Source: Ginglymostoma cirratum
Lineage: Eukaryota
Length of the DNA stretch: 64,000 nt
Direction of reading: 5' to 3'
NCBI GenBank assembly: GCA_024137785.1
Contig: JAHRHZ010000084.1
Location: forward strand, 6,845,573-6,909,572
Numbering within the stretch: the stretch's first letter is position 1; every line of letters starts with the position of its first letter. Both the position numbers and the translations under genes were made by a program. The notes below the pieces were generated by a model. It saw only the letters and a list, made by a program, of their open reading frames with translations, had not been told where the DNA came from and made no database searches. Below, piece by piece: positions 12,551-58,298 of this stretch.

Positions 12551-12947
12551 CTGCTGAATCTATCCTGCCAAAGTATTTTTTAATTGTAGTCGCAATCGTC
12601 ATCAGCTGTTGACAACCTGCGTACGATAGAGACCTACAATTAATACAGATAATTTCCCGTTTTTTTTAGCAGTATTGGCTAAGTTCAGAAAGCGAAAAAA
12701 AAACCCTTCCTCCTATTCCTTCAAGTGATGGGTGAAATTTTTTAAACATGATTTTCTTATAGAATCATTATTCTGTACAAAGCAGATGCTGTTTAACATC
12801 ACTCAACCTTTAATCTTGAGATCTTTAATAGCGAAAATGCTATTCAACTCTCGAAAACAAAAAAGGCGAATATTTTATTCTGAACTCGATAATTCTAGGA
12901 AACACAACTGAAGTGAATGTGGTAATATTTGTAAGCACGATTCCCTG

Positions 12948-13678
12948 ACATGTCAAGTGCAAGATGCAAGATTCTATATCTGTTATGACTTCATTAAATG
13001 GAGAAAAACCTGGGAGTGTTATGCAGAGAAGTCTTATTCCTGTGTGACGAAGCATAACCAAATTCAATTCTCCACTTGACCTTCACACTGACCTCTCTGT
13101 GCTCGGTGCGTCGTTGTGTTCCAGTAATGCTCATTGATCGCTGCACGAAGAGCATCTTGTTGTCCGATTAGGGACTTTATAGTCTTACGGACTAAACACT
13201 GAGTTTATCAGTTTTTGAAAGCAGTCTTGCGTTTTGTTGCTCATATTACAGCAGTGTGCCTGTTCAAGGGCACGAGTTCTGTTTCATTTTTTCTTTTCGC
13301 GCATTGCCATTCTATTTGGCTACGTCCGAGTAACTCTCCAAATGTCCATCACTTCTGTGTTCCCCCTTTCAGAGGCCTCCTTTTGCACGATTTTTTAACT
13401 CTCTGTCTGAACGTGTTACGCTTTTGAACTTTACAAATTTCTAATGGAAAATTGCTGTCCTTGGAAATTTACTCGGATTCTTCTTCCACCTGTGCTGCCT
13501 GATCTTCTGAGGGTTTGCACCTCCTGGTACATTGCACGCAGCTGGAAAATGGCACTTGATCACATGTCAAGTGCAAGATGCAAGATTCTAGATCTGTTAT
13601 GACTTCATTAAATGGAGAAAAACCTGGGAGTGTTACGCAGAGAAGTCTTATTCCTGTGTGACGAAGCATAACCAAATT
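12948..13678 (+). repeat. 117-bp direct repeat (12948-13064 and 13562-13678)
   Basis: Two near-identical copies (2 mismatches seen); the duplicated ORF text MLRHTGIRLLC reflects this. Confidence 0.9.
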
Positions 13679-15772
13679 AACCCCAATATGGCTCATAAAA
13701 AAGTCAACAGATACTGAAAGATCATGAATGTATTTCTAATAGTTAATATTTAATGTCATGTCTCCATTTTCGGAGTTTTCATTCCACCAATCTAACTTTA
13801 CCTTTGTATGAGATCTTACTGATACCTGTCCTGATATTGCGCCCCTTGCTACTTAGTAACAATTACCCGTTGTAAATCGTAGTGAGACTTTGTTCTTCAA
13901 ACACCACAAATAATTACGACACACATTTGAGCCTGTATGTGACAATTTATTTCTGCTCCAGTGGTATCTATCTCTAACTTCGCTGGAAGATAATCACTGT
14001 AAGTCGGCACAAGGAAAACAGTGTCATACATAGATGGCAAAAACTCGCAAATCATTAGGATATAATGAGGGGAATCAATTGAAGTGACCAATCATTCTTC
14101 AACAACCAAATTGCCAACCGAAATTCGCAGCTTTCGATCAAGCCGACGCGAAGAGGAATTTCACATGTCTATGGCAATATTGAAGATCTCACAGTTATGG
14201 TTAGAGAGTATAATGAGCCATTTATTGGTATAACTTCCAGAACTCTGTCCTGAATCAGTTAAGATGTGAGGTCACCTTGCGTTTCCGGGCTTGACCTGTC
14301 ACCACAGGGGTTCTTGTGCTGCACTGATAGTTTCCCCACTTCTGAGCCAACAGAGCCAAATGAAACAGGCTGTAGTAATGATTCGTAAATTCTCTAAACG
14401 GGTTGATTGGAAAATAACAAAACCTGTCGTCTTTCCTACTCCACATTAAAATGAACAACGATAATTCGCTCAATGACAATTAGGGATGGACAACAATCTT
14501 GCCTTGCTTCTAATGTTCATAATGCTAGTTTTAAAAAAGCAAACAGACAGAATGATTCGCGTTTTAACGATTGACGAGCGAAGAGAGGTGTACTTGAAAG
14601 TAAAGGTCTAGGGTGTGTTTGCAATATTTTGAAGGTGGGAGAGAAGTGGCTCATAAAACATAAGGCAAGTATGTTATATTAAACTAGTCCCAGCCTTTAG
14701 ATGTATGCTCAACTCTGAGGGATGTCAAGGCCTTAAAGTGGACGTTAGAAGCTACTTATTGGAATGTTATTAGGGCTGAGAAACTTCAGTGATGTGGAGG
14801 AAGTGATGTTATTCTTGATAAAGATTGGCTGCATTCAAGATTGTGAAAAGTTTGCGTGGTATAAACTAGCATAAATGTTTTGAAGGCATAAACTAATTAG
14901 GATAAAACATATTCTATCAGCTAACCCGGTAACGAGAGGACAGATTGCTAAAAGCCCCAGATGTTTTTGAATTTCACAGTCGCAATGAGTCCCAGCCTAA
15001 CCGTTCCTGCTGAGGAACAAATGTTCGTGCAGATCCGTAGATGACGGTTACCACCCGGATTCCTGAATGACATTCGTCTACTAATTCAGTGCAAATAATT
15101 CTATTCAGCAAACTGCCACTTGCAACAAGCCACAAGTCTGAAAAACTTGGTCTTACTTTCAGTAAAGTTCCCTTGCTCCGTGAACGCTGTACAAGCTTGT
15201 TTCTGCTCGCCGTTCCACCTCCAGGTATCACCAAACGCATTGCTGTGATTATCTGTTGTGGTTTGAGTGGACTAATAGCTCCAAAAGAAAACGATCTGGA
15301 AATAAGTCTAATTGTCCTCATCAGCACTGCAATAGGAAAAAAGATGAATATAATTATCAATCCAATGGTTCCTGCTGGAAACTTGGGTGATCGGAGGATG
15401 TTAAAGATAATGGTGGCAAGAACCTCAGAGGTCCCAAGATAAGTAGTTGCTTACGTGAAGAGGAATCGTTTAGATGAAGGAGCTGGAGTACTGCGGCGTG
15501 TCCCTGTGGTGACTGAAAACAAAGCAAAACTGTCGATCTTCTGATGGAAACGTTTGAGCAGTAAATTAGGAGGGGACCGCCGACCTAACAAACTCCCACA
15601 GGGTAGTACAACCATAGCCAATACGCCGCATTAGTCATGTGATAAGTTATGTCATAATCTCAAGTTTAACATATTTAGCAATGAAACTCATTTGACCCAA
15701 ACCGACCCAAAACCAGTCAGAATTCTGTCCTCGTTTACAGCAAGTAGACCACTCTCTTTAATCGTTTGCAAT

Positions 15773-15827
15773 ATGTCATTGAGAGCAGCGGTTCTGTTCA
15801 TGGCGCTTCTGGTTATGACTTGGCCAG
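15773..15827 (+). CDS. Locus A exon 1: signal peptide (MSLRAAVLFMALLVMTWP, phase 1)
   Basis: ATG at 15773, 18 mostly hydrophobic codons, then G|GTACTC donor. Phase 1 matches the V exon. Identical copy at 57724. Confidence 0.85.
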
Positions 15828-16041
15828 GTACTCTTAAATGTTACGAAGTGCCCTCTTAGTGTAACTTAGACTGTATTTCATATTCACAGCCACTGTGCGT
15901 TGCAATGTTAGATTCTCTGCTTCTCCAATCCGATGCGCGTAATTGTTCTAAAACGTTTCTTGTATTTTGTTCCTCCGTTGTTTTGTCTATTTTGTAGTCT
16001 TCAGCTATTATTACAATTCTTACTTGTTTTATTTTTAATAG

Positions 16042-16347
16042 TCACTAAAGTAACTTCGAGCAAAGTAGAACAGTTTCCCAAACTCTTGAAGTCGGTCAAA
16101 GGTGACAACGTTTCCATGTTCTGCACATTTCCCATATCTGAAACTGTTCCTGAAGTATTTTGGTGGAGACGCAATGAGGAATCCTTTCTGGAATCCGACA
16201 GCAGAAAGCGATTCCATGTCCAGAAAGGAAGGGGCTCACTTCATATCATCAATATCACTGTTGCAGACTCCGGAATGTATTATTGCAAAATAAAACATCA
16301 GCAAACTCTCATTGGAGCTGGAAGTGGCTCGATGCTGACAGTATGCG
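16042..16347 (+). CDS. Locus A exon 2: V-type Ig domain with germline J-like G strand
   Basis: TTTTAATAG acceptor, G|GTAAGT donor, 306 nt. Motifs MFC, VFWWR, SLHIINITVADSGMYYC and GAGSGSMLTV. Confidence 0.93.
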
Positions 16348-17781
16348 GTAAGTGACACTTCCAGGGGCAGACAACTCTTCAGTTGTTTGGTGTAATTTAT
16401 GTGACGTGAGGTTTTATAATTCGATGAAAATACAATGATGGTGTATTCACTTCACACCTTCATGGGGATCTCTTCCCCGTTGACTTCGCTGTACAACGGT
16501 CTTTGATTTGCTTTCGCCTGTTTTGTGCCTTTTTTCAAGATTAATTCCACTGCTCACTGCGATCATGACTGCACAGTGCCGTTAATGTGATGAGTGCAGA
16601 AACGGTTTATCTTGCGTCAAGATAGTGAAACAGGACAACAAATCAAATCTTGGGGTGAAATTAATTGATGAAATACCATAAAATAATGAACTGCGGAGGC
16701 TAGAAATCGGAAAAAAAAGAAATTGCTGGAGAAACTTAGAATGTCTGGCCGCATCAAGTGTAGAGTCGCCAAGCGTTTTAACTGTACATTTTTCCAATAC
16801 TAGGATGCTCGAAACGCTAACTTTTTTAAAAACAAATGAATAGCAGGATCCAATAAGAGGGAAATCTTTGATCTGGCCCTAAACATTAGATTCTATCCCC
16901 AGTCGTGAAGTTTACAGGACAGTGAAGGTACCCACTTCGTCTGTGGTTCGCCAACTGGACTTTCTGTGATGCATGCACAACAGGGATAGTGAATGAAGGA
17001 CTGTACCAATCATACATAAAGACCTCTGGGATCCTGTGTTTGTAATTTATTATTTCGATGCAGCGTGACTCACGACCGGAGACCAAGATAATACTTTTTT
17101 TTGTCCAAATGGGATTTCTGTAATATCTAAAGCAGATCTGTGGGGAAAATTGAAAAATTCTCTACCTTTGATGGCAATAAAAACTCGCATAAATTTGGAA
17201 ATGAATAAAATATCTCACTCAAACTCAAGCACCATAAACATGCCGAGAAGACATGTTAAGAATATTTGTTATAATAAACAGTAGAACAATACAAACCCAG
17301 GAACATTACTTCCACCTAAGCATTAACTGCGGATCGAGAGGGTGCATGTTTACTTTAGTAATTCGTTAAGGTGGAATTGATATTTCGATGGGGTGTGGGT
17401 AGTTCAGGCAAAGGCGGAAATACGAATCACTTCTAATTCCCCTGTTTACACCAGGGAGAATCTCCTCCAGGGAAAGAAAAAAACATGTCCAACAAACGAA
17501 TGCACTTTCAGATGGACAAATCCCTTAGAATTATTTTAAATCCTCCACTTTACCAAAGGTTTTCCGCCCGGGTTCACCTTCGCTGTGCATTGTTTGAAAA
17601 ACATCCTAACATTATGCCGTGTATTTTTAAAAATAAATGCAAAGACCAAGGTTAAAATACGATAACAAGGAAAACTGTTATCGCATCATGAACAATGTGG
17701 GATGGATGGGGGTGCGGACGCAGTGGAGAGGAGGAAACAAAAGGGGATGTTCGTTAATTAAAAAAAAACTTTCTGTTATAG

Positions 17782-18078
17782 TTCCCCCTACCGACCTGAA
17801 AATCATTCCCGTTGAAGGAGCTTCAGGGAATTACCTGAAATTCGAGTGTAAAACGACTGCTTTTTACCCTGAGGATTCAGGAATCTCCTGGCTAAGAGAT
17901 GGTGTTAAAATTCAGGCTGGAATAGAAACTGTGATAAACAAGACCGTGGATGGCCTTTATGAAGTTACTAGTTCATTGGAAGAAACACTGCCTGCGCAGA
18001 GCAGCGCAGTTTATACCTGCCTGATACCTCACGAATGTCTTAAGGCACCCGCCAGCGTCAGCTACACTTTTAATCGAG
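17782..18078 (+). CDS. Locus A exon 3: C1-set Ig domain
   Basis: TTATAG acceptor, G|GTAAG donor, phase 1-1. C1 signature: ECKTTAFYPEDSGISWLRDG, DGLYEVTSSL, YTCLIPH. Confidence 0.93.
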
Positions 18079-19488
18079 GTAAGATTGAACATGTTCCCAA
18101 AATGGAATTGGGGTCTGTGATGGCGGCGGGGTGGGAATCGGGTAGGAAAGAACTTAAACGTGTACTTTTAAGGCGTGTAAGGGTGACCGGTGTTCATTCG
18201 CAATGCCACAGAAATGGAAACAAAACAAAATATTTTAAGGTCGCTTGCTGACACAGAAGGGTGAATCGGTCTCTGAATGACCTGAAACGGGAGGTTGACG
18301 GGAAAACTGCTCAGACGTTGATAAATCGACAACATTTAATTGCTGAGTGAAATGAAAGTTCATATTAAATAGATCCATTCCGCCTGAGTACCTTTTACAA
18401 GCGGTACATGTATATTGTTTACCCTGTCCAGCAAATCTCCGCCAACAACGTCTTCAGTTGTCTGTATCCTAAACTTGGAAAATTCCGGCCTCTCCCTGTA
18501 CCGCTGTGGTTTTCCTTGTTTAGGACGCTTCTTCATCCTTATTTCTCTCTCTCCTAGGACTACTTTATGTATGGCTGATAACGCCCTGTGAAGTGTCTTA
18601 GAATTATTTTTAACACAGCTAAAGGAGCAGTATAATTGCAAATTGCTGTTGTTACATATACCAAAAGTGTCAGTCGGTTTTGTCCGAGAAGGCTGGAGAA
18701 GGGCGTCATAAAGCATACAAAATCCTTTCAGGGCTTGCCAAGCTAAATAAGGAAAGGGTATTTCTCCTGGATGATTGTCTAGAATCGAAAAAAAAACGTT
18801 TCAAAATAAGGGGCAGGTCATTTAGGACTGAGGTGAAGAGGAATTTCTTCAACCACAAACTTGGGAATTCAGAACCACCCTCCCCTGCCCCGCACCGCTC
18901 CCCTCCCCACACTCCACCGCAATGCCGGAAACACTGGGCCAATCAGGTTATAAAATACTGAGATCGACAGATTTCCAAACGTTAAATGATATGTAAATAT
19001 CGCAAGTAAATAACGCTGAGGAAGTTCAACCATGATATAGTTGAATGGTGGAGCGTGCTCGAAGATCCCAGTGTCTCACTCGTCCCTGTCTCTATGTTCC
19101 TTGGTAACCGAAATTAGGAATTGACAACTTTGCCAGATCTTGCAATTGTTGTTCATCTGTCTGGTTTAAGACAATGAGTAAGTAAGTGCAAATTCCTTTA
19201 CTTACAGCAAACAACCCTCCTATGCAGCGAGGTGGTTCTCGCTGCTTTAAGTCATGAAATGTGTCTTCTCCATAAAATGCATGCTGAGCTGCTGAGTTGA
19301 CGTCCTCTGATGCACTTTACCGCCCTTGTGTAGTTATTCCCATCGAAATTAAAACGCTCCAACTTGGCTAATGGCAGGGTTATGCTGGGAGACATCTTTG
19401 TAATTCGTTATCCTGTACATGATGCTCTGCGCATGTAACTCGTTGTGTTTCACAATTGTTCACTTCCATCAATTGTTGATCCCTGTAG

Positions 19489-19593
19489 GTGAAGATATCA
19501 ATCTTCCGCTGATCGTTGGATGTGTCGGAGGGACATTGGCAATGTTACTATTCATAATATGTTTGATGACACACAAGTTGAAGGCATGGGCTG
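19489..19593 (+). CDS. Locus A exon 4: transmembrane segment (GEDINLPLIVGCVGGTLAMLLFIICLMTHKLKAWA)
   Basis: CCCTGTAG acceptor, G|GTAAG donor, phase 1-1. About 22 hydrophobic residues with no charge, followed by a basic stop-transfer. Confidence 0.88.
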
Positions 19594-19924
19594 GTAAGAA
19601 CCTTTCTTATTTTGCTGGGTACCTTTTATTTCCTTAGATCCAGCTTAAAAGCATGAAGAGCGTGTGATCAATCAAGGGCTGTGACTTCACATTGTGCAGA
19701 TGAGAGCCTAACGCAGATCTGAAATGCAAACATTTCACCTTCTTACCCGAACTATACACTTGACTTTTTCATGACCATATTGCTACAATTGAAATTATTA
19801 TTCAGTGCGGATCTAGTTCCTAAACAGGAAAATTTCTGAATCAGATTTTGACTTTCGGCATTAAAGTGAATGTTTTCGAACTGACGACTAGATACGCACA
19901 TCTACAGATTTTATTTCCGTTGTA

Positions 19925-21285
19925 ATGTTGTGGCGTCAATGGGCCGCCGACCCACATTTTGCACTATCACACGGAGACAAACTGTCCATCATTGGGTGCA
20001 GCGCAATGTGAGCAATGAACAGATGGAGCTGGTGCGTTTCATTGCAAATTTTTCGTCACCCTGCGAGGTAGTATCGTCAGTGCGCCTCCGTCGAAGAGTC
20101 GGTGTTCTGACCCGCTTGTTATTTATATACCTCAGTTTGTTGGGGTGTTTGATACCACTTCCGTTTCTCAGTGGTTTGTACACCGGGTCTATTTCAACGT
20201 TTTTGTTGATGGAGTTCTGGTGAGAATACCAGGCCTTCTGGAATTCCCTAGCTCGTCTCTCTTTGGTTTGTGCGATTATGGATCTGTTTTCCCAGTCGAT
20301 CTCGTGTCCCTCGTTGTCACCGAGTGTAGTGAGAGAAGTGAGAATTGGTCGTGTCTCTTGGTGGCTAGTTGGTGTTCGTGTGTCGGTGTTGTCAGTTTTC
20401 TTCCGGTTTGGCCCATGTCGTGTTACTCACATGGGCCTTGCATGGTATTTTGTATGTTACACAGGTTTTACTGGTTTTGGGCATGGGATCCTTTACATTC
20501 GTCTGTCTCCGTCGTAAGGTGGTTGTTAGTTTGTGGGCTGCTCTGATACTTAGGGGTCTGAGTAGTCTTGTGGACATCTGTGAAATGTCCTTGATGTAAG
20601 GTAGGGTGATTAGTGAGTCAGGTCGTGTTGTGCTCTGTCTCGGAAGTAACGGCGGGTTGTGCTATTTGGATATCTATTCCTTTTGAAGACTCCGTGTAAG
20701 CGCTCTGTTCTGCTTTATGTCGTTCTGGGCTGCTGCAATGTGTTGTCGCTCGTTTAAATAGTGTCCTAATGCAGCTCGTTGGTGGCTTTGGAGTGGCCGC
20801 TAGTGTAATTGAGTATCTGCTCCGTATGTATGGTCTTTCACATACGCTACTCTGGAGTTTCCCGTTGTTTTTGCGTCCTACCATTGTAACCAGGAAGGGT
20901 AGTCGGTTGTTGTCCTCTTTTTCTTCTGTGAATTTTATCCCAGTGAGGAAGTTGTTTATGTGTCGATGGGTTTCTTCTAGTTTTATGCATTTGATAATCT
21001 CGAAGGTGTCATCTACGCTTTGGATCTAACATTTGGGTTGTAGAGTGGGGAGCGCTGTCCATTCTAACTTTTTCACGACCCCTTCTGCAATCATTCCTGA
21101 TATTGGGGATTCCATTGGTGTGCCGTTGATTTGTTTGTATATGCCGTCGTTGAAGGTGAAGTGGGTTATGAGGAACAGGGCTAGTAGTTTCATGATGCTG
21201 TCCTTGTCGATGTTTTTGGCGTCCTAGAGTGCCTGCCTACTTGATTCGTCCGGTAGTGCGGCAATTGTTTCTTTGGCCAGACGAT
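19925..21285 (-). mobile_element. Penelope-like retroelement fragment (RT C-terminus plus GIY-YIG) in intron 4 of locus A
   Basis: Minus frames: YKQINGTPMESPISGMIA, CIRTLFKRATTHCS, TLPYIKDISQMSTRLLRPL, VTYKIPCK. Confidence 0.85.
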
Positions 21286-21435
21286 CTCACTGCAGTTAAT
21301 ACTGCTGAACACCTACGGAAGGTAGGTTTTCGTACTAAGTAAAAAAGTAAATGTTTCTAGCAACGAAAGCATGACATTAGATTTTCTGATACATTGATTC
21401 CGTTATTCACAGTAGATTTCTTTGCTTTCTATTAG

Positions 21436-21479
21436 GCAAAGGGATAAATTCGATGGAAGCAGGTCAGAATGACGAGCTG
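21436..21479 (+). CDS. Locus A exon 5: short cytoplasmic exon (GKGINSMEAGQNDEL)
   Basis: TTTCTATTAG acceptor and GTAAGG donor. 44 nt converts phase 1 to phase 0, as needed to join exons 4 and 6. Confidence 0.72.
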
Positions 21480-22409
21480 GTAAGGCAACATTATTCTTTT
21501 TATTCCTAACAAAAATGGTAGAGGAGGTGGGCTCATGGGAAAGATAGTAATGGATTTTATATTCAGTCGAAATTATTTAGATTTCATAGAACACAGAATT
21601 CTATAGCAAGAGATGCATCGCCTGCGCCTCTGCTGCCTCTATGAGATGAGTCAATTTATCCACTCTCACGTTGTTTAGCTATTTATCTGATTTTTCGTTT
21701 CAATCTAATTTCCCCTTGAAGGTTCCTATCGAATCTCTTTCTGTCACTTTCTGTTGATGGGCAGCTTACTGCAACGGGCTGTAGAAAAAGATTCTTCCTA
21801 GACGACAAGGGACCCTTTCAGCAAATCTCTTGTTATACGCCCTCGAAAACCTTGGCACCTTCAAAAAGTAGTACCTGCAGTGAGTGGTTCAAAAGATCTC
21901 AGGTCTTTCTGCGCTGTATGCTGGCTGCAGTGCGTGTCGGAGGTAGGGGGTGGGTGGGAGCAGATGGGTGCAATAACGGTTGTAGAAATGTTAGAGGAGA
22001 CTTTTGTCAGGAATTGTTGGTCGCCACTTGGGGGATATAACTTTACAGAAGTGTAACGAGAACAGACTAACGCTTCGCTGTCATCTCTTCTATCAGATTT
22101 GGCTAACTATGGAATAGGAAGACTACCTCGCCACAACAAGGTCAAAGAGAGTTAGAGATAAATGACGGAATAATGAATATCTATTATTCATTGGCTAGAT
22201 GTTAAAATGTAGGGGAATACATTAAACGCTCTGCGTTTCATACTTAGCATGTTACTCCGCACCACATTGGCGATATATTAGGCGCAAATCATTGAGAATT
22301 GCCAGAATACAATTGCGACATTGATTGTCTGCTGTCTGTATATTTACCTTCTCAGGTTCAATTCCAATCGGTGATGTTTGGCTAAAAAAAAATCAGATTC
22401 GCTGCTGTT

Positions 22410-22882
22410 ATAGCCATAGAGTCACACAACCCGGAAACAGACCCTTCCGACCAACCAGTCCATGCCGAACGCATTCCCAAAATAAAATAGTCCCACCTGC
22501 CTGCTCCTGGCCCATATCCCTCTAAACATACCCTATTCATGTACTTATCTATTGTCATTGTACCCACATTCACCACTTCCTCAGGAATTTCATTCCACAC
22601 GTAAACGATCCTCTTTGGAAATAAACGGCCTCCATTTTTTGACATTTCTCACCTCTCACCTTAACATGTCCCCGCGGTCTTGATTTCCCCTCTCTAGGGA
22701 GAGGACAACTACAACTAACTCCATCTATTCACATCATTATTTTATAAACTTCTATAAGGTCGCCACTCAAACTTTTTTGCTCCACTGAAAAAAAATCCCA
22801 GCCGAGCCACCTTTTTTTATAACTCAAACCATCCATGCCCAGCAATCTCTGGTAAATCTCTTCTGAACTTTCTCCAGCTTTA
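22410..22882 (-). mobile_element. CR1 LINE 3-prime fragment
   Basis: Minus ORFs RIVYVWNEIPEEVV and LSGDLIEVYKIM. Confidence 0.8.
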
Positions 22883-22908
22883 AGTATTTCATACATTTTT
22901 TTCTCTAG

Positions 22909-23019
22909 CTTAGACAAGGAACAACTGAAGAAAATGTCGTCTATGCTACTGTAAACTTGACAGATAACAAAGGAAAATCCAAACACAGGCACAAAGAAGA
23001 ACACATTGTCTATTTCCAG
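22909..23019 (+). CDS. Locus A exon 6: cytoplasmic ITIM exon (LRQGTTEENVVYATVNLTDNKGKSKHRHKEEHIVYFQ)
   Basis: TTTTTTTCTCTAG acceptor, CAG|GTAAG donor, 111 nt, phase 0-0. Contains ITIM VVYATV. Confidence 0.85.
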
Positions 23020-23919
23020 GTAAGATGGAGAATTGTCAAATATGAAATATCCATGTTACACCCATGTGAGGTCAACACTGCGACAATGGAGTCATTTTTT
23101 AAAAAAAGGCACTGCGCAGTATTAAGGGAAGAACGTCTTTTATTTTTATTTTATGGAGCAGGGCAGGCAGTGGTAATCCAGATGCCAAGGTTAAAAATAT
23201 GAGGACACAACAAGGTCAAGTAGGGCTAGAGATAAATGAGGAAATAATAAATATCTATTATTCATTGGCGATATGTTAACATGTCGTTGAATGCATTAAA
23301 CGCTCTGGATTTCATATTTAGGACATTACTCCGTACCACTGGAGCAGCTAATGAAACTTAATCGGAATCAATAGATTTGGAATGTAAAGCTAGCCTCAAC
23401 GGTGTTGATCATGCGAACTGTCATCAATTGTATCAGAAAAAAAATACAGGGCATTGGTGAGAACACATTCGAAGTATTGTGTACATTACTGGTCACGATT
23501 TTGATGGAAATATATTAATTCATAGAAAGCAGCGCAGGGAAAGTTTACTAGACTAATACCTGGAATGAGTAGATTCTGTTACGTGACCTTACGTTGATAC
23601 GACATGGGTTTGCTAATGGACTTCAGGGAACGAAAACGATCATCCTTACCTGGTCTGCACTACGTGTGGGTCCAGGGCCACAGCAATGTGATTGATTCTC
23701 AACTGCAATCTGGGCAGTTCGGGGTGGGAAATGACTGCTGACCTAACCAGTAATGCTCACATATTATGAATGAATTAACAAAATAGAAGAAATCCGTTTA
23801 GACCATCGAGTCTGCTTCGCCATCCAACGAGATCAAAACGGATCTGACAAGCCTCTATTCCACATTCCTGCTTCTTCCCTGTAACACTTTATTTGTTTGT
23901 TAACTGGAGACACAGAAAG

Positions 23920-25900
23920 CCATAGCGTCATAGAGCCGTACAGCACGGAAACAAACCCTTCGGTCCAACAAGTCCGTGCCAAACATAATCCCGAACTAAA
24001 CTAGTCCCACCTACCTGTTTCTGGCCCATATCCCTCCAAAACTTTCCTGTTCATATATCCATGGAAATGTTTTTTTAAGCGTTGTAATTATACCCGCATC
24101 CATCACTTTACCCAAAAGTAGATTACACACTCAAAGCATCCTCGATGTAATGAACAATGCCGCATGTATTTTTAAGACTCTCTCCTCTCACCTTAAAAGC
24201 TTGCCCCTTATTCTTGAAATTCCCCATCTCAGGGAAAAGACAACTACCATCAACTCTATATATACCTTCCATTATTTCAAAAACTTCTATCAGTTCACCT
24301 CTCAACCTCCTATGCTCCAGTGGAAAAAAAGAAGTCCCAGCTTATCCATTCTTTCCTTACAACGTAAATCTATCAATTTAGGTTTGAGTGTTCTTAAGCT
24401 CTTAACTAAGACAATCTTTTATACGAAATAATTTGACAGATTCACTACCCTCTCAAAGAAAATACATCCTCATCAGTTTTAAATTTGCAACCACTTATTC
24501 TGAGATTATGCCCTCTGAATCTGGACTCTCTCACATGGGATGCAATATCTCCACGTCTGTTCTGTCAAGTTCCCTACGAATGTTATATGTTTCAATAAGG
24601 TTACCTCTCCTTCTTCAATGACACCAGGACCAGCCTACTCAACCTCTCCTCACAAGAGAGTTTCATAAGAGATGAACCTTGTCTGGACTACCTCTAATGT
24701 CAGTATGTCTTTTCTGAGATCAGGGGAAGGAAACAGCTCACAATATTCAGCCATAGCCTAACTAGTACCTCGTATACTTTTGGCCTATTTTTATACCCTA
24801 TTCCCTTTGCAATGAGACCCACATTTCATTTGCCTTCTGAAACGTACTCAAATTGTGTGCCATCTCTTTTTTTGTGATTCATGCATGAGTAATCCCGAAT
24901 CCCTCGGCTCCATGGCTTTATGACGTCCTGCATTTAAATAACATTCAGCTCCTCTATTCCTCCTTCCAAAATGCATAATCTCATATTCCACATTATACTC
25001 CATCTGCTAACTCTTTGCCGATTCATGTGTCCTCCCTATATCCCTCTAAAACTTTTTGTGTCATCCTTATAACTCTGTGTCCCACCTACTTTAATGTTAT
25101 CCATGAACTGGCTGTTGTGCATGCACTTTCTGCCTCCAAGTCTTTCATATATATGTGTGGAAAAAATGTGGCCCTAGCACTAATCCTATTGCCAATTCAC
25201 AAATTCCAGATTTATATTCTGAAAATGCCCTACCCCCATCCCAACTCTCAGTGTTTTATTCATTAACTAGTGCTCTAACCATATTAATGTACTACCTCCG
25301 AGGCCATAGGTTTTTACAAGTAACCTAATGTGTGGTACCTTAGCAAATGCCTTATGAAAATCCAAATATATTACATCCACTACTTCTCCTTTATCTGTCC
25401 TCATATTTACCTCCTTACAGAATTCTAATAAAATTATAAGGCATGATTACCCCTACGTGAAGCCATGCTAACTCTCCTACTTCTAAATACTTTATAACAG
25501 ACTGAAGAATTCCCTCCAAAATGGATGTTCAGCGAACAGGCCTGTATTTGCATATTACTGTCTCCTTCCCTTTTAAATAAAGACGTTGGTTTGGCAAATT
25601 TCTAACCCTCTGGGAGTCTTTTATCTCAAAATCTAAGCACTTCTGGAAGATTACTACTGGTGCATCCAGTACTATGGTTACTTTCTTTGATATCCGAGGA
25701 TGCATCCCATCAGGTACAGCGTACTTATTAGACTTATGCCTCATCAGCTCCCACCCCCCACACACATGTTTTCTCCAGTGATAGTTATATTTATTTCATC
25801 TCCTCCTTTTGTCCTTGAATATTTAATAATTAGGTAAGCTATTACCGTCTTCTACTCTGAAAACTAATTCAAAGTATTCATTCAACACCTCGACTGTTTC
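23920..25900 (-). mobile_element. Nested or adjacent CR1 LINE fragments in intron 6
   Basis: MRGELIEVFEIMEGIYRVD and PDGMHPRISKK, both CR1 RT-region motifs. Confidence 0.75.
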
Positions 25901-27379
25901 CTGATTCCCCATTATTCTTTGCCTCCGCCTCATTTTTGGCTTCTGTCTTCAGTTTTGTAGGCTATAAGCCGTAGGATAGGTATCGTCTTGAGTTTAGAAG
26001 ATTCGGAAGTTACTTAGTCGAAACATATACAATCCTGGCAGACTTGACCAGGTGGCTGTTGAAAGGATCGTTCCTTTTTTTTTGAACAATCTAAAACTAG
26101 AGCTTACTGTTTAAAAATGAGGGACTGCCCATTTAATACAGAGTGAGGATTATTTGTTTCTCTCCTGGGTTTATGAGTCTTTGGAACGTCCTTCCTTAAA
26201 AGGCAGTAGATGCAGAAAATTTAAATATTTTTAAGGCAAGGGTAGATAGATTCTTGATTACCACGCAGATGAAAGACTAGCGGGGTTGGTGAGGGGCTGT
26301 GGTGCAGAAATGTGGAGTTGAGTGTACATCAAATCAACCATGATCTCATTGAATGATGGTGCGAGCTTGAAGGGCCAAGTCGTCTGCACGTATTACTTGT
26401 TTGTATGATGCAGGCAACTTGCTGCTATGTTATTACCTGGCCTGCCCGACATATGATCTGGACTCCCAGCCACGTGATTGATATTTAACAACTATAGCAA
26501 ATGGCTTAGCAATGTACTCAGCTCAAGAACATTAGCGATGGGCAACAAATACTGATATTCTCACTGACATCTTAATTAGATGACAAAAAAAGGCAAAATA
26601 AAGGCACTGTTCGGAAATCAACATCTTTCCTACTGATTTGTCGGAAACATAAATCGCGGCAGATGTCAAACGGGCAGCGGGCATTTACAGACAAAGTACC
26701 ACACTGAGAACAAGTTGCCTTATTTCTGCCTTGTTGACTCCAGCACCAGGAAAAATAAAACAAACCCAGGCAGGCAGAGGAGAGTACTGTCTATGATCAC
26801 GTACAGCTTTACCACTTACTGTAATACTTTCAATGTCACTTGTACTGCACTAAACTATAGGAATTGAAAGATCCTTAATTTAACCTGCGTTCGATCATCT
26901 CAACCAAAGGTCACTGTATTCGCCCTGGGTTCCAGGGATCAGAAGATCAGCTGCAGTGGGGTAAAAAGACAGTTGAAAACTTTGACTTGAGGCCTCTCCA
27001 TGGGATAAGCAGATCAAATTGGTTGTCATGTTTCAGAATTTGGGGCTTGAAAGAGATGTTTTGCAATATCAGTATTCCAAACACATTTAACATGCCGGCA
27101 TTTTATTGCTTTACTATTTTAATTGAAGTGATTGCCTGTTCCCCTAAACGGGCAATGTTGATATTCTAATCCATTTTGAGAGAAGTGCAGACCAGAATAC
27201 CAGGAAGTTTTACGGCAAGGCTACATAGTGGAGAGAAATCAGAGATAGAAAACAATACAATCTGAAATTGGTAACTGACGACGGGAAATTTCACTAAAGC
27301 CTTTAAAATAAAATCTTGACTGCCTTTGGAAATGAATCGATGAAAGACTAATGTGTGGTGCAAAATTTTACTTTCACAG

Positions 27380-27520
27380 ACCAAGCAAGAAAGCGAAAAT
27401 AATAAACTGACTTACGCTGCTCTGCAAATAGCTGATTCCAAGAAAGCATCAAAACCCAAACAGCAAGACAGTTCCGCATTATATGCAGAAGTAAAGGTGA
27501 CAAAGAAAGCGAGAATCTGA
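27380..27520 (+). CDS. Locus A exon 7: terminal ITIM exon (TKQESENNKLTYAALQIADSKKASKPKQQDSSALYAEVKVTKKARI*)
   Basis: CTTTCACAG acceptor, phase 0. ITIM LTYAAL and ITIM-like ALYAEV; TGA at 27518-27520. Confidence 0.85.
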   Translation, partial: TKQESENNKLTYAALQIADSKKASKPKQQDSSALYAEVKVTKKARI

Positions 27521-28099
27521 GACTCTAAATATATCGGGAAGATGGAAATATTAATGGATGCAGGTCCAGAACATTTCGTTACGTATCATAAAACGTGCTC
27601 CAATCACTATTATCATTCATTACAGTCAGGCTAAGAACGAACTATCTGGAATATCTGCGTCTATTAGGGAAATGCTACCTGGAAGAATTGTTGGCCAGTC
27701 CATTACAAAACCCTTCCAATGCGGCAAGTTGAAAACTAATTTCAGACCAAGAGTTCTGGTTTTTGAACGTGCACTTGTTTATGCGTTTTGACATTAACAT
27801 TTAGTTTGTACGTAGTTTCTTGAGGTTCACGAATATAATTTACAATACTTTGGGGGACTGGCTACTGTTGGAACCGAAAACAATCATTCACTAAACACGA
27901 TATCCTATATGGTCTTCTTGGTCATGGGATAAGCAAGAGGAATGACACTGCATCCAAAACTCCGCAACTGGCCCTGAAACCGTTTTCTTTAGTTATTCGA
28001 GTTTAGTGTCTTCCATTTACAATAGTGAAACACCAAGCTCAACAGGCACAGGGATACAATTAAGTTCTACTCTTAAGGCGAAAATATTACTAAAATGCA

Positions 28100-28400
28100 C
28101 CAGCCTCCGAGCTTTGGTGGGACCTGCGTTTCCGCGAGGAGTTCCAACAGTTCGTCAACTTCGGGGACACCTTCCACCCCGCCCTCAAATTCATCTGGCA
28201 GCACGACCATTGCCCCGAGCAATGCCTGCCTCTTTGTGGGATTGGTAGAACAGTCCCTCTTTCGTAACTACACCGGTACCATCCCTCACCTCTTTCTCCG
28301 CTATATTGATGACTGTATCGGTGCGGGCGTCATGCTCCTGTGAGGTTTTCGAGCAGTTCATCAACTTTGCCAACACCTTCCATCCCGCCTTCACATTGGC
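28100..28400 (+). mobile_element. Penelope-like RT fragment
   Basis: ACLFVGLVEQSLFRNYTGTIPHLFLRYIDDCIG, containing the YIDD RT motif. Confidence 0.8.
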
Positions 28401-29869
28401 TCACCCCTGAGCTGCTGTACCACTGTAGGCAAAATGTATATATCATATTCTATTCACAAACAAAACAGAAAATTAAATATGGGCCCCAAAGGTTTTTTAA
28501 ATCAAACCTTTACTACAGGAGGCCGACTGAGTTAGAGAGAACAGGTTAGAAACAATTTATTGAAACACAGAAGCAATTTAGTTCATGCCTCTCAAAAATA
28601 TGCCCATTTAGAGCCCAAACCCCGAGATCCAGTCGTGTCAAAATGAACTCTGACTGACGTCCGCCTGGCTGTCGTCCAGAATTGTACTGTTTTCATTGCG
28701 ATGTTGTAACCTGTGCCGGTTCGATGAGTCCAACAAGGTGTAGACATAGACATCTGCTAAAAGGCGTTATTGCAGAACAGAGCAGAACACAGAGGTGCAC
28801 CCATGGTTCCAGTATTGCAGATCAATTTATTTCAAGCCTAATGAACTTACAGGAGCAGAAAATGGTCAAGACACTGCAGGAACAAGGCACGTGCCCAGGT
28901 TGAATCCTCTACAAAGATTAGAGAGAGCTCGTCAACAAACTTGTAACTGTGTTCAAGGATTTAATTGGCCAACAAATCGTCGACTTTCCATTGTAAACAA
29001 TATAAATAGTCTGGCCAATGCTTACATTGACTTGTTATCTGGTAAGACATTGGCGCCACTTAAGTGATATGTGATATGTCCTCGGGCATAATATTTTGGA
29101 ACAATTTACTAGGTGATGGTGGGACAGGTCCATTGATTTTGAAATTCCATAGTCTGCACGTATCAATTCGCTGTTTCAAAGCTGACAGAGCTGTTTGCCC
29201 AGCAGGGTGGGTGGTTGGTAGGAGTGGGTCTTAGCAACAGGAGTTAGCGGGTGTAAGCCATCACCTGTCATTTCATGTGGTTTGTCGAAGTTTAAAGCAG
29301 TGACCTGTAATGCCTCACTGCATTGCACAAGACCCAAACTTAAGCTATGCTTGCACTGCATTTGCAATGTAAATTAAATTTTTCTTCATTCTCTCTATTA
29401 ACAGACATTTTCCAACCTGTTAGTCATGACCTCTTTACAGATCTCTCGAGATAACAAGAAGCTGTAACAAACAATATACATTAAGGTATAATTGCATGCA
29501 TCATTTTCAACGAAGCTTAGTATAAAATAATACATATCTACAGCAAATATAGTTAAATAAGCAAAACAATGAACAATAGATGCTGGAAAACTCTTTTAAA
29601 AAAACCGAGGAATTACTGTCCAAACTCAGTAGATCTGGTAACATCTGTGGGGAGAACGTGGAGTCAACATTTTCAGTGCAGTGATGTTCTGGTCAAAGTT
29701 CTGATGAATACTACCCAGATTCTAAATTTCTCAGTGACACTCCCAGCTTCTGCCAGAGATAATGTTCTACCACATTATCTCGGACCAAAGCTTAAAACTA
29801 CATTAATGGACAACATCAAGATGTAACAGACTTCTCACTCGCTAAGAAAAAATACATGGAAGAAAAGTT

Positions 29870-31980
29870 GAGATAACAAGTTGTGGAGCTGGATGAACAC
29901 AGCAGGCCAAACACCATCAGAGGGACAGGAAAGCTGACGTTTCGAGTCTGGGCCCTTCTTCAGAAATAGGGGAGGGGAAGGGGATTCTGAAATTAAAAGA
30001 GAGAAGAAGAGGCGGATGGAAGACGGATAAAGGAGCAGATAGGTGTAGAAGAGACAGACAGGTCAACGAGGCGGGGATGGAGCCAAGAAAGTTGAGAGTA
30101 GGTGGGGAGTTAGGGTGGGGATAATTCAGTCCAGGGAGGACGGACAGGTCAAGGAGGCACGATGAGGCTGGTAGGTAGGAGGTGGGGGTGGGGCTTGAGG
30201 TAGGAGGAGCAGATAGTTGGGCGAAAAGACGGACAGGTCATGGAGGCGGGGATGAGCTGGGCTGGTCTTGTGATGAGGTCGGGGGTGAGGAGATTTTGAA
30301 GCTTGTGAAATCCACATTGAGACCATTGGGCTGCGGGGTTCCCAAACAGAATATGAGGTGCTGTTCCTCCAGCCTTCAGGTGGCATCTTTGTGGCCAATG
30401 TGGTGATTTGGAGGAAGCCTAGGATGGACATGTCGTCCAAAGAGTGGGAGGGGGAGTTGAAGTGGTTCACAACTGGGAGGGTCGTTGTTTGTCATGAACT
30501 GAGCATAGACTCCGCTTGGTTTCCCCGATGTAGAGACCACGGATTCAATATACCACATTAGCAGATGTGCAGGTGAACATCTCTCCATTGTGAAAGGTTC
30601 TCTTGGGGCCTGGAATGGGGGTGAGGGGCGAAGTGTAGGGGCAGCACTTCCTGCAGTTTCAGGGAAAAGTGCCAGGTTGGTGGAGCGGATGAGGGAATCA
30701 CGGATAGAGCCATCCTTCCGGAAGGCAGATAAGGGTGGGAGTGAAAAATGTCCTTGCTTGTGGGGTCAGATTGCAGGTGGCGGAAGTGGTGGAGGATGAT
30801 GCCTTGAATCCGGAGGTTGGTGGAATGATCGGTGAAGACGAGGGGAATTCTGTCTTTGTTGTTATTGCAGGGCGGAGTTGTGAGGGATAAGTTGCGGAAA
30901 ATGCGAGAGCTGCGTTCGAGGACATTTTCAACCACTGTGGAGGGGAAATTGCATTTCTTGAAAAAAAAAACGAGGACATCTGGGATGTCCGGGAGTGGAA
31001 GGCCTCATCCTGAGAGCAGATGTGGTGGAGGCGAAGGAATTGGGAATAGGGGATGGCATTCTTACTGGAGGGTGGGTGAGTGGAGGTGTATTCTGGGTAG
31101 CTGCTGGAGTTGGTGGGCTTGAACTAGATATCAGTTGCCAGGTGGTTAGCAGAGATGGAAACAGAGAGGTCCAGAAAGGAGAGAGAGACATCAGAGATGG
31201 TACTGGTGAATTTAAGGTTAGGGTGGAAGGTGTTTGTTAAGTGGATGAACTGCTCGAATTCCTTGTGGGAGCACGAGGTAGCGCCGATACAGTCATCGAT
31301 TTAACGGAGGAAGAGGTGGGGAATGGTGTCAGTGTAGCTGCGGAAGAGGGACTGCTCCACATATCCTACAAAGAGGCAGGCATATCTTGGGCCTTTGCAG
31401 GTACCCATGGCCATCCCCTTTGTCTGTAGGAAGTGGGAGGAGTTGAAGGAGAAGTTGTTAAGGGTAAGAACGGGTCGGCTAAGCAGATAAGTGTGTTGGC
31501 GGAGGGGGACTGGTCGGGCCTGTGGGAGAGGAAAAAGCGGAGGACTTTTCGGCCATCTGCATGGGGAAAGCAGGTATATAGGGACTGGACATCCACGGTG
31601 AAGATGAGGTATTGAGGACCAGGGAATCAGAAGTTTTGGAGGAGGTGGAGGGGTGGTTGGTGTCACGGAAATAGGTGGGGAGTTCCTGGACGAGAGGAGC
31701 GAAAATTTAGTCTAAGTGGAGATAAGTTCGATGGGACAGGAGCAGGCAGAGACAATGGGTCGACCAGGGTAGTCAGGTTTATGGATTTTGGGAAGGAGAT
31801 AGAAACGGGCGGTGCGGGGTTGTGGTTGGAGGCTGTGGGTGAGAGGTCGCCTGAGGTGATGAGGTTGTTGATAGTCTGGAAGATGATGTTTTGGTGGTCG
31901 GGGTGGGGTCAGGATCAAGGGGGAGGTAGGACGATGTGTCAGAGAGTTGGCGCCTGTCCTTGGCGATGTAGAGGTCAGTG
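29870..31980 (-). mobile_element. Penelope-like retroelement, 5-prime truncated and frameshifted
   Basis: RFYLLPKIHKPDYPGRPIVSACSCP and NNFSFNSSHFLQTKGMAMGT; GIY-YIG region remnants; terminal repeat with a hammerhead core at 29936-29963. Confidence 0.9.
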
Positions 31981-37388: not shown

Positions 37389-37694
37389 CCTCTGAAGTAA
37401 CTTCGAACGAAGTAGATCAGTTTTTCAAACTCTTGAAGGCCGTCAGAGGTAACAATGTTTCCATGTTTTGCATATTTCCCATATTTGAAAATGCTCCTGA
37501 AGTACTTTGGTGACGATGCAATGTAGAATTACTTCTGGAACCCGACAACAGAAAGTTACTTCATGGACAGAAAGTAAAGAGCTCACTTCATGTTTTCAAT
37601 GTCACTGTTGCAGACTCTGGAATGTATTATTGTAACATAAAGCATCAGCAAACCAACAATGGAGCTGGGAGAAGAGAGTTGTTGACTGTGTTTG
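37389..37694 (+). pseudogene. Locus B V exon, inactivated
   Basis: Colinear 306-nt homolog of A exon 2 (GNNVSMFCIFP, NVTVADSGMYYC). TGG became TGA at 37511-37513 and the donor GTAAGT became CTAAGT. Confidence 0.9.
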
Positions 37695-40648: not shown

Positions 40649-40945
40649 GTGCCCCAAGCCAGTTGAAAATTACCCCCATTAAAAGGTTCTCAGTGGTTTC
40701 TCCAAAACTCGAGTGGAGAACGATCGCCTTTTATCCAGAGGATGTAGGAATCCCCTGGCTAAGGGATGCTGTCACAATTCTGGCCGGAATGGAAACTGTG
40801 AAAAAGAAGACCGTGGATCGGCTGTATGAGGTGTCCAGTTCATTGGAAGAAGCATAGCCCGTGCGGAGTGGTGTAGTTCATACCCGCTAGGCATCTCATG
40901 TCTGTCTTAAGGTGCCTGCCAGTGTCAGCTACACGATCAGTAATG
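40649..40945 (+). pseudogene. Locus B C1 exon, inactivated
   Basis: Colinear homolog of A exon 3 (AFYPEDVGIPWLRD, LYEVSSSLEE). No AG acceptor, both canonical Cys lost (to W and R), TAG stops at 40855 and 40888. Confidence 0.9.
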
Positions 40946-57723: not shown

Positions 57724-57778
57724 ATGTCATTGAGAGCAGCGGTTCTGTTCATGGCGCTTCTGGTTATGACTTGGCCAG
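57724..57778 (+). CDS. Locus C exon 1: signal peptide
   Basis: Identical to 15773-15827, including the donor site. Confidence 0.82.
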
Positions 57779-57992
57779 GTACTCTTAAATGTTACGAAGT
57801 GCCCTCTTAGTGTAACTTAGACTGTATTTCATATTCACAGCCACTGTGCGTTGCAATGTTAGATGCTCTGTTTCTCCAATCCGATGCGCGTAATTGTTCT
57901 AAAACGTTTCTTGTATTTAATTCCTCCGTTGTTTTGTCTACTTTGTAGTCTTCAGCTATCATTACAATTCTTACTTGTTTTATTTTTAATAG

Positions 57993-58298
57993 TCACTAAA
58001 GTAACTTCGAGCAAAGTAGAACAGTTTCCCAAACTCTTGAAGTCGGTCAAAGGTGACAACGTTTCCATGTTCTGCACATTTCCCATATCTGAAACTGTTC
58101 CTGAAGCATTTTGGTGGAGACGCAATGCGGAATCTTTTCTGGAATCCGACAGTAGAAGGCGATTACATGTCCAGAAAGGAAGGGGCTCACTTCATATCAT
58201 CAATATCACTGTTGCAGACTCCGGAATGTATTATTGCAAAATAAAACATCAGCAAACTCTCATTGGAGTTGGAAGTGGCTCGATGCTGACAGTGTGCG
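57993..58298 (+). CDS. Locus C exon 2: V-J-type Ig domain
   Basis: Open frame with intact splice sites; 8 nt differences from A exon 2 by manual count. Confidence 0.9.

What the first reader, a model, noticed from the sequence alone, without database searches (positions are those of the whole stretch)
15773..27520. Non-rearranging VJ-C1 receptor with a four-tyrosine inhibitory tail
Seen: seven exons with canonical splice sites and consistent phases (1,1,1,1,0,0) give a 352-aa protein of leader, V with germline GAGSGSMLTV J-like strand, C1, uncharged TM, and VVYATV, IVYFQT, LTYAAL, ALYAEV. The ORF track misses the leader and most of the tail. Known: C1-set domains are largely restricted to Ig/TCR, MHC/B2M, tapasin and SIRP-type molecules; germline-joined VJ domains occur in NKp30, CD8, SIRP and NITR-type genes; SIRP-alpha has four tail tyrosines. 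Inference: this is a TCR/IgL-chain-shaped innate inhibitory receptor, a SIRP-like or VJ-C1 family member that resembles the proposed pre-RAG antigen receptor and is probably uncharacterised in this lineage.
Basis: partly seen in the sequence, partly recalled or inferred. Interest (0 to 1): 0.9.

Follow-up and report, generated by a model that had tools for sequence, protein, structure and literature searches.

The report
Shark SIRP-like V-C1 inhibitory receptor gene
This is a real, transcribed shark gene for a cell-surface immune receptor shaped like a single T-cell-receptor or antibody light chain but carrying an inhibitory signalling tail; it belongs to a family found in all cartilaginous fishes that looks most like mammalian SIRP receptors and that I found described in no held paper.

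Summary
Seven exons with canonical splice sites and intron phases 1,1,1,1,0,0 give a 352-codon reading frame. A spliced contig from public run X1 joins C1, TM, a 44-nt exon and the first tail exon at exactly the predicted boundaries.

The domain calls hold:
- The V exon folds as a compact antigen-receptor-type V domain. It has the J motif GxG[S/T]xLxV and no C'' strand, and its best structural matches are shark VNAR.
- The next exon is a true C1-set domain.
- The TM is uncharged.
- The tail has four tyrosines. Two are canonical ITIMs, and the tyrosines sit in two pairs spaced 23 residues apart.

The gene is not an orphan. Relatives occur in sharks, rays and the chimaera Callorhinchus, under inconsistent automatic names. 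Long ITIM-tailed forms alternate with short-tailed forms that carry an arginine in the TM, which is the pattern of a paired receptor family. The window holds three copies: A (this gene), B (a pseudogene) and C.

The nearest known family is SIRP, but membership is not shown: there is one C1 domain rather than two, the ectodomain scores about equally against Ig light chains, and synteny could not be tested.

First-stage notes report SIRP-like V-C1 genes on other DNA pieces of this genome. Interest is moderate.

The parts
15773..15827 (+). Exon 1: start codon and most of the signal peptide (18 codons plus 1 nt); phase-1 'split leader'
   Evidence: ATG followed by a hydrophobic leader and a GT donor. 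An identical leader lies at locus C. It resembles the leaders of Heterodontus relatives. The length of the X1 contig overhang upstream of C1 (430 nt) fits V plus leader plus about 69 nt of UTR (indirect).
16042..16347 (+). Exon 2: compact V(J) domain. Cys27 and Cys81 are 53 residues apart, and the J-like G strand G93-S-G95-S-M-L-T-V100 is encoded in the same exon.
   Evidence: Pfam V-set 3.6e-10. The AF2 model has pLDDT 91.5, with strands A, A', B, C, D, E, F, a G strand split at residues 93-95, and no C'' strand. The top Foldseek matches are shark VNAR, TCR V-alpha, CD79b, VpreB-J and SIRP-alpha d1. G93, G95 and V100 are (nearly) invariant in 33 family rows. No RSS-like heptamer/nonamer was found in 15500-18200.
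17782..18078 (+). Exon 3: C1-set Ig domain (Cys22, Trp36, Cys79, FYPED, YTCLIPH)
   Evidence: Pfam C1-set 2.8e-8, 34.4 bits against a cut-off of 21. The AF2 model has pLDDT 87 with A, B, C, C', D, E, F and G strands. The top Foldseek matches are MHC class II beta-2 and Ig CL domains. X1 contigs end or begin at both exon borders.
19489..19593 (+). Exon 4: short stalk and an uncharged transmembrane helix (LPLIVGCVGGTLAMLLFIICLMT), followed by basic stop-transfer residues
   Evidence: Sequence. X1 contig record 2 joins 18076 to 19487 and ends this piece at 19592 with no mismatches. It is homologous to the TM of Heterodontus relatives.
21436..21479 (+). Exon 5: 44-nt cytoplasmic exon (GKGINSMEAGQNDEL), shifting phase from 1 to 0
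   Evidence: It is the only candidate of 41, 44 or 47 nt with an open frame and AG...GT flanks that lies in bin 21301-21500 and matches both the contig's 44 unlisted letters and the bin depth of 2.99. It resembles the Heterodontus stretch 'NSEEAGQ' at the same position.
22909..23019 (+). Exon 6: first tail module, with VVYATV (ITIM) and IVYFQ(T) spaced 23 residues apart
   Evidence: The X1 contig piece 22908-23019 has no mismatches. It shows 46-51% identity to the same module in Heterodontus and Chiloscyllium models.
27380..27520 (+). Exon 7: second tail module, with LTYAAL (ITIM) and ALYAEV (ITIM/ITSM-like) spaced 23 residues apart, then the stop codon at 27518-27520
   Evidence: Canonical acceptor, phase 0. 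It shows 66-72% identity to the C-termini of Heterodontus and Chiloscyllium models, and the module is conserved as far as Callorhinchus.

Best explanation
Locus A encodes an expressed type I membrane protein of 352 residues. It is the inhibitory (long-tailed) member of a multigene family of germline-joined V(J)-C1 receptors found across Chondrichthyes. That family also contains short-tailed forms with an arginine in the transmembrane helix, so it behaves as a paired receptor family of the SIRP-alpha/SIRP-beta kind.

Shown here:
- The exon structure and its splicing.
- The two domain types.
- The uncharged TM.
- Two canonical ITIMs, and conservation of the four-tyrosine tail across cartilaginous fishes.

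Inferred:
- The membrane-distal compact V domain binds a ligand that is not yet known.
- Src-family kinases then phosphorylate the tail tyrosines.
- Each pair of phosphotyrosines, spaced 23 residues apart, recruits the tandem SH2 domains of SHP-1, SHP-2 or SHP-2L.
- These phosphatases damp activation of the cell that carries the receptor.
For: Exon model and splicing.

Domains: Pfam, AF2 models and Foldseek.

Family range: relatives at 44-80% identity occur in Chiloscyllium, Heterodontus, Scyliorhinus, Heptranchias, Mobula, Hypanus, Hemitrygon, Narcine, Pristis and Callorhinchus.

Tail conservation: for example VAYDSL / TVYTQT / LTYASL / TQYAEL in Callorhinchus and TEYAPL / IIYSQT / LTYAAL / TLYADV in Mobula.

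Short-tailed forms: they have Arg at the outer end of the TM and D/N-H at the inner end. A relic of such a TM exon lies at locus B of this window.

Tree: ITIM and Arg-TM forms interleave in the C1 tree with 100/99 and 100/100 support.

Nearest known family: SIRP-alpha d1-d2 aligns over the whole V-C1 unit (42.6 bits, and d3 a further 33.6). The two nearest ESM Atlas clusters are SIRP-alpha clusters, at 0.97 and 0.96.

Against: - No binding, phosphorylation or cell-type data exist.
- The tissue of run X1 is not known, and only one run shows the transcript.
- Two of the four tyrosines do not fit the ITIM consensus.
- The Arg-TM forms are only presumed to be activating, and no adaptor has been identified.
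- Junctions 1-2, 2-3 and 6-7 are supported only indirectly.
Confidence: 0.72

Rival explanations
1. The family is the direct (co-)orthologue of tetrapod SIRP-alpha/beta: same ancestral gene, same tail, and a CD47-like ligand. One C1 domain was either lost in cartilaginous fishes or gained in tetrapods.
For: - SIRP-alpha is the best-scoring non-antibody V-C1 protein in the profile search of solved structures.
- SIRP-alpha clusters are the nearest ESM Atlas clusters.
- Both have a V(J) domain followed by C1, four tail tyrosines in two pairs, and a paired partner with a basic TM residue (SIRP definition in PMC12975943).
- The RefSeq pipelines often name relatives SIRP-alpha-like or SIRP-beta-1-like.
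Against: - There is one C1 domain, not two. The RNA contig joins C1 straight to the TM.
- Ig light chains score as high or higher over the V-C1 unit, at 48.7-51.5 bits.
- ITIM tails of this wording are common to many Ig receptor families, so the tail alone does not prove common descent (general knowledge).
- The automatic names of relatives are inconsistent.
- Synteny and phylogeny with real SIRPs were not tested.
Confidence: 0.3
2. The family is an independent cartilaginous-fish lineage descended from the non-rearranging VJ-C1 precursor of antigen receptors. It would be sister to Ig/TCR/UrIg rather than to SIRP, with an inhibitory tail acquired separately.
For: - Split leader, a single-exon VJ with GxG[S/T]xLxV, a C1 domain and then a TM: the layout of a TCR chain.
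- The V model matches VNAR and TCR V-alpha best.
- The C1 exon's best solved-structure hit is UrIg2, followed by Ig constant domains.
- The V-C1 unit aligns end to end with light chains.
Against: - The UrIg2 score is a sum over three domains, and each domain alone is weak, at E 5e-4 or worse.
- The position of the J-motif Phe is hydrophilic or small in the family (A, N, D, K, T), and C'' is missing. By analogy with VNAR and SIRP d1, this argues against a canonical V-V dimer interface (inference).
- There is no stalk cysteine for an interchain bond.
- Linkage to the MHC or the antigen-receptor complex was not tested.
Confidence: 0.2
3. It is a B7/butyrophilin-type ligand (NCR3LG1-like or CD276-like), as some automatic names suggest, rather than a receptor.
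For: Some relatives are auto-named NCR3LG1-like, PD-L1-like or CD276 homolog. The BTN-type Ig-C model gives a weak hit (4e-4).
Against: - The BTN Ig-C hit is below Pfam's cut-off, whereas C1-set is above it.
- The V domain has a J motif and matches antigen-receptor V domains best.
- The tail carries ITIMs that are conserved across the family.
Confidence: 0.04
4. The tail exons belong to another transcript, or the gene is a non-functional copy.
For: Locus B next door is a pseudogene.
Against: - All seven exons have open frames and canonical sites.
- The contig runs from C1 through exon 6 and on for 334 nt.
- Protein models from other cartilaginous fishes join the same modules.
Confidence: 0.03

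Closest known systems
SIRP family (SIRP-alpha inhibitory, SIRP-beta activating; PMC12975943)
   Same: An N-terminal V domain with a J-like G strand followed by C1-set domain(s). An uncharged TM and a tail with four tyrosines that recruit SHP-1/2 in the inhibitory form. A sister form with a basic TM residue. A tandem multigene cluster. It is the nearest family in the profile search of solved structures and in the ESM Atlas search.
   Different: One C1 domain instead of two. The V domain is about 15 residues shorter and lacks C''. Only two tyrosines are canonical ITIMs. The basic TM residue of the short forms is Arg near the outer leaflet. The ligand is unknown. Orthology is untested. SIRPs were so far reported from mammals, chicken and Anolis, 'origins unknown' (PMC9652883).
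UrIg and UrIg2, non-rearranging shark VJ-C1 genes (PMC12227049)
   Same: Cartilaginous-fish genes with a split leader, a single-exon VJ and C1-type domains. UrIg2 is the best solved-structure hit of the C1 exon.
   Different: UrIg has three C domains and is secreted. UrIg2 has nine or more C domains. Neither has an ITIM tail described. The per-domain similarity is weak. Those genes exist as single copies, not as a paired multigene family.
Ig light chains and TCR chains
   Same: V(J)-C1 order with the same J/C boundary. They align end to end at 48-51 bits. TCR chains also continue into a TM.
   Different: V and J are joined in the germline and no RSS is present. The tail is a long ITIM tail instead of a few residues. 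There is no stalk cysteine. The V domain lacks C''.
IgNAR variable domain (VNAR)
   Same: The best structural match of the V model (TM 0.78-0.82). Both are compact V domains without a C'' strand.
   Different: Only 24-29% identity. VNAR is made by rearrangement and sits on a five-C-domain secreted or membrane Ig heavy chain.
NKp30 (NCR3) and PRARP, non-rearranging VJ receptors
   Same: A germline-joined VJ domain on a membrane receptor. Both are discussed as relics of the antigen-receptor precursor (PMC10751288, PMC11599192).
   Different: NKp30 has no C1 domain and has an activating-type TM (my own knowledge).

Membership tests
SIRP family | Membrane-distal V-set domain with a J-like G strand | tested here: met
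   Pfam V-set. The GxG[S/T]xLxV motif is conserved. SIRP-alpha d1 is among the Foldseek hits. The domain is, however, shorter than SIRP d1.
SIRP family | [quoted passage not shown] | tested here: not met
   Only one C1 exon lies between V and TM. The RNA contig joins C1 directly to the TM exon. Relatives also have one C1.
SIRP family | Cytoplasmic tail with four tyrosines in ITIM-type motifs that recruit SHP-1/2 | tested here: inconclusive
   Four tyrosines are present in two pairs spaced 23 residues apart. Y1 and Y3 fit the ITIM consensus, Y2 does not, and Y4 has Ala at -2. Binding to SHP phosphatases cannot be tested here.
SIRP family | Paired partner with a basic transmembrane residue | tested here: met
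   Short-tailed relatives have Arg in the TM, and locus B carries a relic TM exon of that type. They interleave with ITIM forms in the tree. No adaptor is known.
SIRP family | Orthology by phylogeny and by conserved neighbours of the SIRP locus; CD47 binding | not tested
No tetrapod SIRP sequences could be fetched, because the word-indexed searches returned only cartilaginous-fish proteins.
Non-rearranging antigen-receptor-like VJ-C1 genes (UrIg type) | Split leader, V and J in one exon with the J motif, and no RSS | tested here: met
Non-rearranging antigen-receptor-like VJ-C1 genes (UrIg type) | C1-set constant domain | tested here: met
   Pfam C1-set is above its cut-off. The fold matches MHC II beta-2 and Ig CL domains.
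Non-rearranging antigen-receptor-like VJ-C1 genes (UrIg type) | Closer to Ig/TCR/UrIg than to other IgSF families; linked to the MHC or the antigen-receptor complex | tested here: inconclusive
   Scores against light chains, SIRP-alpha and UrIg2 lie within about 15 bits of each other. Linkage was not testable.
Pfam C1-set (PF07654) | Score above the gathering threshold; FYPxxI..W and YxCxVxH hallmarks | tested here: met
   34.4 bits against a cut-off of 21. FYPEDSGISW and YTCLIPH are present. C22, W36, C79 and H83 are invariant in 35 rows.
ITIM | (I/V/L/S)-x-Y-x-x-(L/V/I) | tested here: met
   VVYATV and LTYAAL fit. IVYFQT and ALYAEV do not fit strictly.
B7 / butyrophilin | IgV without a J motif plus a B7/BTN-type IgC domain | tested here: not met
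   A J motif is present. The C2-set_3 and C2-set_2 hits are below their cut-offs, while C1-set passes.
Tapasin / TAPBPR | Large N-terminal domain before the C1 domain | tested here: not met
   Only a 101-residue V domain precedes C1.
PRARP | Sequence relationship to the chicken PRARP genes | not tested
   Neither the paper nor the sequences are held.

The most novel reading that the evidence does not exclude
The family is a surviving membrane-bound, non-rearranging descendant of the VJ-C1-TM gene from which TCR and Ig chains arose. On this reading it is closer to antigen receptors than SIRPs are, and it is kept in cartilaginous fishes as paired inhibitory and adaptor-coupled germline receptors. 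That would make the signalling and pairing of a 'pre-RAG' receptor directly testable.
Probability: 0.15. Interest if true: 0.85.

Novelty: new variant of a known kind. Interest (0 to 1): 0.55.

Why it matters
A 2022 review states that the evolutionary origin of SIRPs is unknown and lists them only from mammals, chicken and Anolis (PMC9652883). A family across all cartilaginous fishes with a SIRP-like layout, a conserved four-tyrosine tail and Arg-TM partners would push this type of paired checkpoint receptor back to the base of jawed vertebrates.

Its V(J)-C1-TM layout also bears on current work on non-rearranging antigen-receptor relatives in sharks (UrIg and UrIg2, PMC12227049). It offers a membrane-anchored example that can be tested at the bench.

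Tried and rejected
- **My first tail model.** It had six exons and 334 aa, with an acceptor at 22919. The RNA contig rejected it: it has 44 extra letters and starts the next piece at 22908/9.
- **Homodimer test.** I tested the ectodomain of the Heterodontus relative P0004 as a homodimer. The result was no verdict, so it counts neither for nor against.
- **Searches for relatives outside cartilaginous fishes.** Two profile searches returned only cartilaginous-fish proteins. Only 8000 word-sharing candidates were scored, and SIRPs and light chains, which score 60-80 bits against the same profile in the solved-structure search, were not among them. This is therefore no evidence of absence.
- **V-exon search of the representative library.** It was swamped by giant multi-Ig proteins. 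Only the single-stretch hits at 41-64% identity were family members.
- **Papers not held.** The PRARP paper, the 2023 UrIg paper and Ohta et al. 2019 were unavailable. Literature searches found no description of this family.
- **Runs X2-X4.** They showed only interspersed repeats and some intron sequence, not the exons.
- **Null scans.** The RSS scan, Rfam and tandem repeats in 29000-33000 found nothing.
- **Joined protein.** Exons were handled one by one by reference, and whole-protein comparisons used database relatives.

Full report
**What is there**

The window is vertebrate DNA of about 40% G+C, rich in interspersed repeats.
- Exon 1, 15773-15827: leader.
- Exon 2, 16042-16347: V.
- Exon 3, 17782-18078: C1.
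- Exon 4, 19489-19593: stalk and TM.
- Exon 5, 21436-21479: 44 nt.
- Exon 6, 22909-23019: first tail module.
- Exon 7, 27380-27520: second tail module and the stop codon.

Every intron starts with GT, ends with AG and has a good pyrimidine tract. The intron phases are 1,1,1,1,0,0. Each exon was searched or folded by reference, and whole-protein comparisons used database relatives.

**Transcription and splicing**

Run X1 holds a 768-nt contig that lies on 17905-18076, then 19487-19592, then carries 44 letters not listed in the pieces table, then lies on 22908-23019, and runs on for 334 more letters. X1 depth in bin 21301-21500 is 2.99. That equals the contig's depth of 13.6 times 44/200, so the 44 letters fall where exon 5 lies.

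A second X1 contig ends at 17781, which is the C1 acceptor, and continues for 430 letters. That is enough for the V exon (306), the leader exon (55) and about 69 nt of 5' UTR.

A contig that skips three introns at canonical sites, in a run of only 106 million letters, must come from spliced RNA. They rest on splice signals, on phase, and on protein models from other cartilaginous fishes that join the same pieces.

**The domains**

Pfam gives V-set (3.6e-10) for exon 2, with Ig_3 and I-set scoring about as well. It gives C1-set for exon 3 at 2.8e-8 and 34.4 bits, against a curated cut-off of 21.

The V domain is short, with 53 residues between Cys27 and Cys81. This agrees with the first-stage note s1-879147. 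An AlphaFold2 model built with 33 family rows has pLDDT 91.5. It shows strands A, A', B, C, D, E and F, a G strand interrupted at residues 93-95, and no C'' strand.

The best Foldseek matches of the V model are shark IgNAR V domains, followed by TCR V-alpha, CD79b, VpreB-J and SIRP-alpha d1. The J-like motif reads G93-S-G95-S-M-L-T-V100. G93, G95 and V100 are invariant or nearly so across the family, and some members have the textbook GTGTQLTV. No RSS-like heptamer/nonamer lies in 15500-18200. The V domain is therefore a germline-joined, compact, antigen-receptor-type V.

The C1 model has pLDDT 87 and strands A to G, including D. It matches MHC class II beta-2 and Ig CL domains best. It carries the FYPxxIxxxW and YxCxIxH hallmarks.

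**TM and tail**

The TM helix has no charged residue. The tail has four tyrosines:
- VVYATV and LTYAAL fit the ITIM consensus.
- IVYFQT does not fit, because position +3 is Thr.
- ALYAEV has Ala at -2, where many relatives have Thr, which would be ITSM-like.

Tyr1 to Tyr2 and Tyr3 to Tyr4 are each 23 residues apart. That spacing suits tandem SH2 domains (general knowledge).

The two-module tail is conserved in rays and in the chimaera, for example VAYDSL / TVYTQT / LTYASL / TQYAEL in Callorhinchus. [quoted passage not shown]

**A family, not an orphan**

The window itself holds three copies:
- Locus A is this gene.
- Locus B has a V exon at 37391-37690 with an in-frame stop and a C1 exon at 40654-40941 with two stops and both cysteines lost. 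A relic TM exon of the short-tail type lies at 43035-43127.
- Locus C has a leader at 57724, a V exon that is 95% identical to A's and a C1 exon that is 88% identical. Its homology to A stops at 62076.

Database searches found relatives in at least ten genera of sharks and rays and in Callorhinchus. Their automatic names include SIRP-alpha-like, SIRP-beta-1-like, tapasin-related-like, NCR3LG1-like, Ig lambda-like, HLA-DO-beta-like, CD276 homolog and uncharacterized. The closest is a Chiloscyllium plagiosum model, 80% identical in V and ending with the same last five residues. The window therefore probably comes from a shark near the carpet sharks.

Short-tailed members have Arg at the outer end of the TM and D/N-H at the inner end. 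In a C1-only tree of 35 rows, loci A and C are sisters (99/92) within a Chiloscyllium clade (100/98). ITIM and Arg-TM forms interleave with full support. This is the pattern expected of paired receptors.

**Comparison with known families**

A profile of nine family members was searched against all solved structures. Over the V-C1 unit it aligns to:
- Ig light chains, at 48.7-51.5 bits.
- SIRP-alpha d1-d2, at 42.6 bits, with d3 a further 33.6 bits.
- UrIg2 V-C1, at 35 bits.

UrIg2's top rank for the C1 exon alone is a sum of three weak domain hits. By language-model features, the two nearest ESM Atlas clusters are SIRP-alpha clusters, at 0.97 and 0.96, which is a lead only.

SIRP is thus the closest known kind in layout, tail and pairing. 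One defining feature, two C1 domains, is not met, and orthology could not be tested.

The held literature describes UrIg and UrIg2 as the non-rearranging VJ-C1 genes of sharks (PMC12227049, PMC10751288). It also says that the origin of SIRPs is unknown (PMC9652883). I found no paper on this family, but several key papers are not held.

**Verdict**

The gene is best described as the inhibitory member of a paired family of SIRP-like V(J)-C1 receptors found throughout cartilaginous fishes. It is a new variant of a known kind rather than a new kind. Whether it is a true SIRP relative or a separate relic of the antigen-receptor precursor stays open.

First-stage notes on other pieces of this genome (s1-878913, s1-879107, s1-879117, s1-878924, s1-879188, s1-879091) describe similar genes. 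The scan has therefore met this family before on other DNA.

Noticed in passing
window 37391-37690, 40654-40941, 43035-43127 (+): Locus B is a decayed paralogue. The V exon has an in-frame stop. The C1 exon has two stops, and both canonical cysteines are replaced. About 2.1 kb downstream lies a relic TM exon of the short-tail type with an Arg (…AIARFPVSFIIILG…), like the TM of Scyliorhinus P0041.
   Followed up: partly
window 57724-57778, 57993-58298, 60951-61247 (+): Locus C has an intact leader, V exon (95% aa identity to A) and C1 exon (88%). DNA homology to locus A runs 13529-18937 against 55470-62076 and then stops. No TM-like open frame was found up to 64000. The upstream, leader and V part (88.9% nt identity over 3.3 kb) is more alike than the C1 part (about 79%).
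   Followed up: partly
window 26691-26806 (+): A relic duplicate of the second tail module lies in intron 6. An open 93-nt stretch (26691-26783) flanked by AG and GT, in phase 0-0, begins TKYHTENKLPYFCL, compare TKQESENNKLTYAAL in exon 7. It is followed in another frame by …EESTVYDHVQ. It may be a dead exon or a rare cassette exon. Relatives such as Heterodontus P0180 have this module repeated.
   Followed up: no
window 22300-22900 and 20100-20700: These intronic stretches are covered at depths of hundreds to thousands, at 90-95% likeness, in all four runs laid, including the two runs labelled organism B. They are highly repeated, transcribed interspersed elements.
   Followed up: no
window 12009-12602 (-) and 28095-28343 (+): These open frames look like fragments of a LINE-type endonuclease and reverse transcriptase (…SDHC…; …RYIDDCIG…). 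They flank locus A.
   Followed up: no
window 30001-32000: This block has G+C of 0.53 and a GC skew of +0.48, far from the rest of the window. No tandem repeat was found there. It is probably the antisense strand of a transposon.
   Followed up: partly
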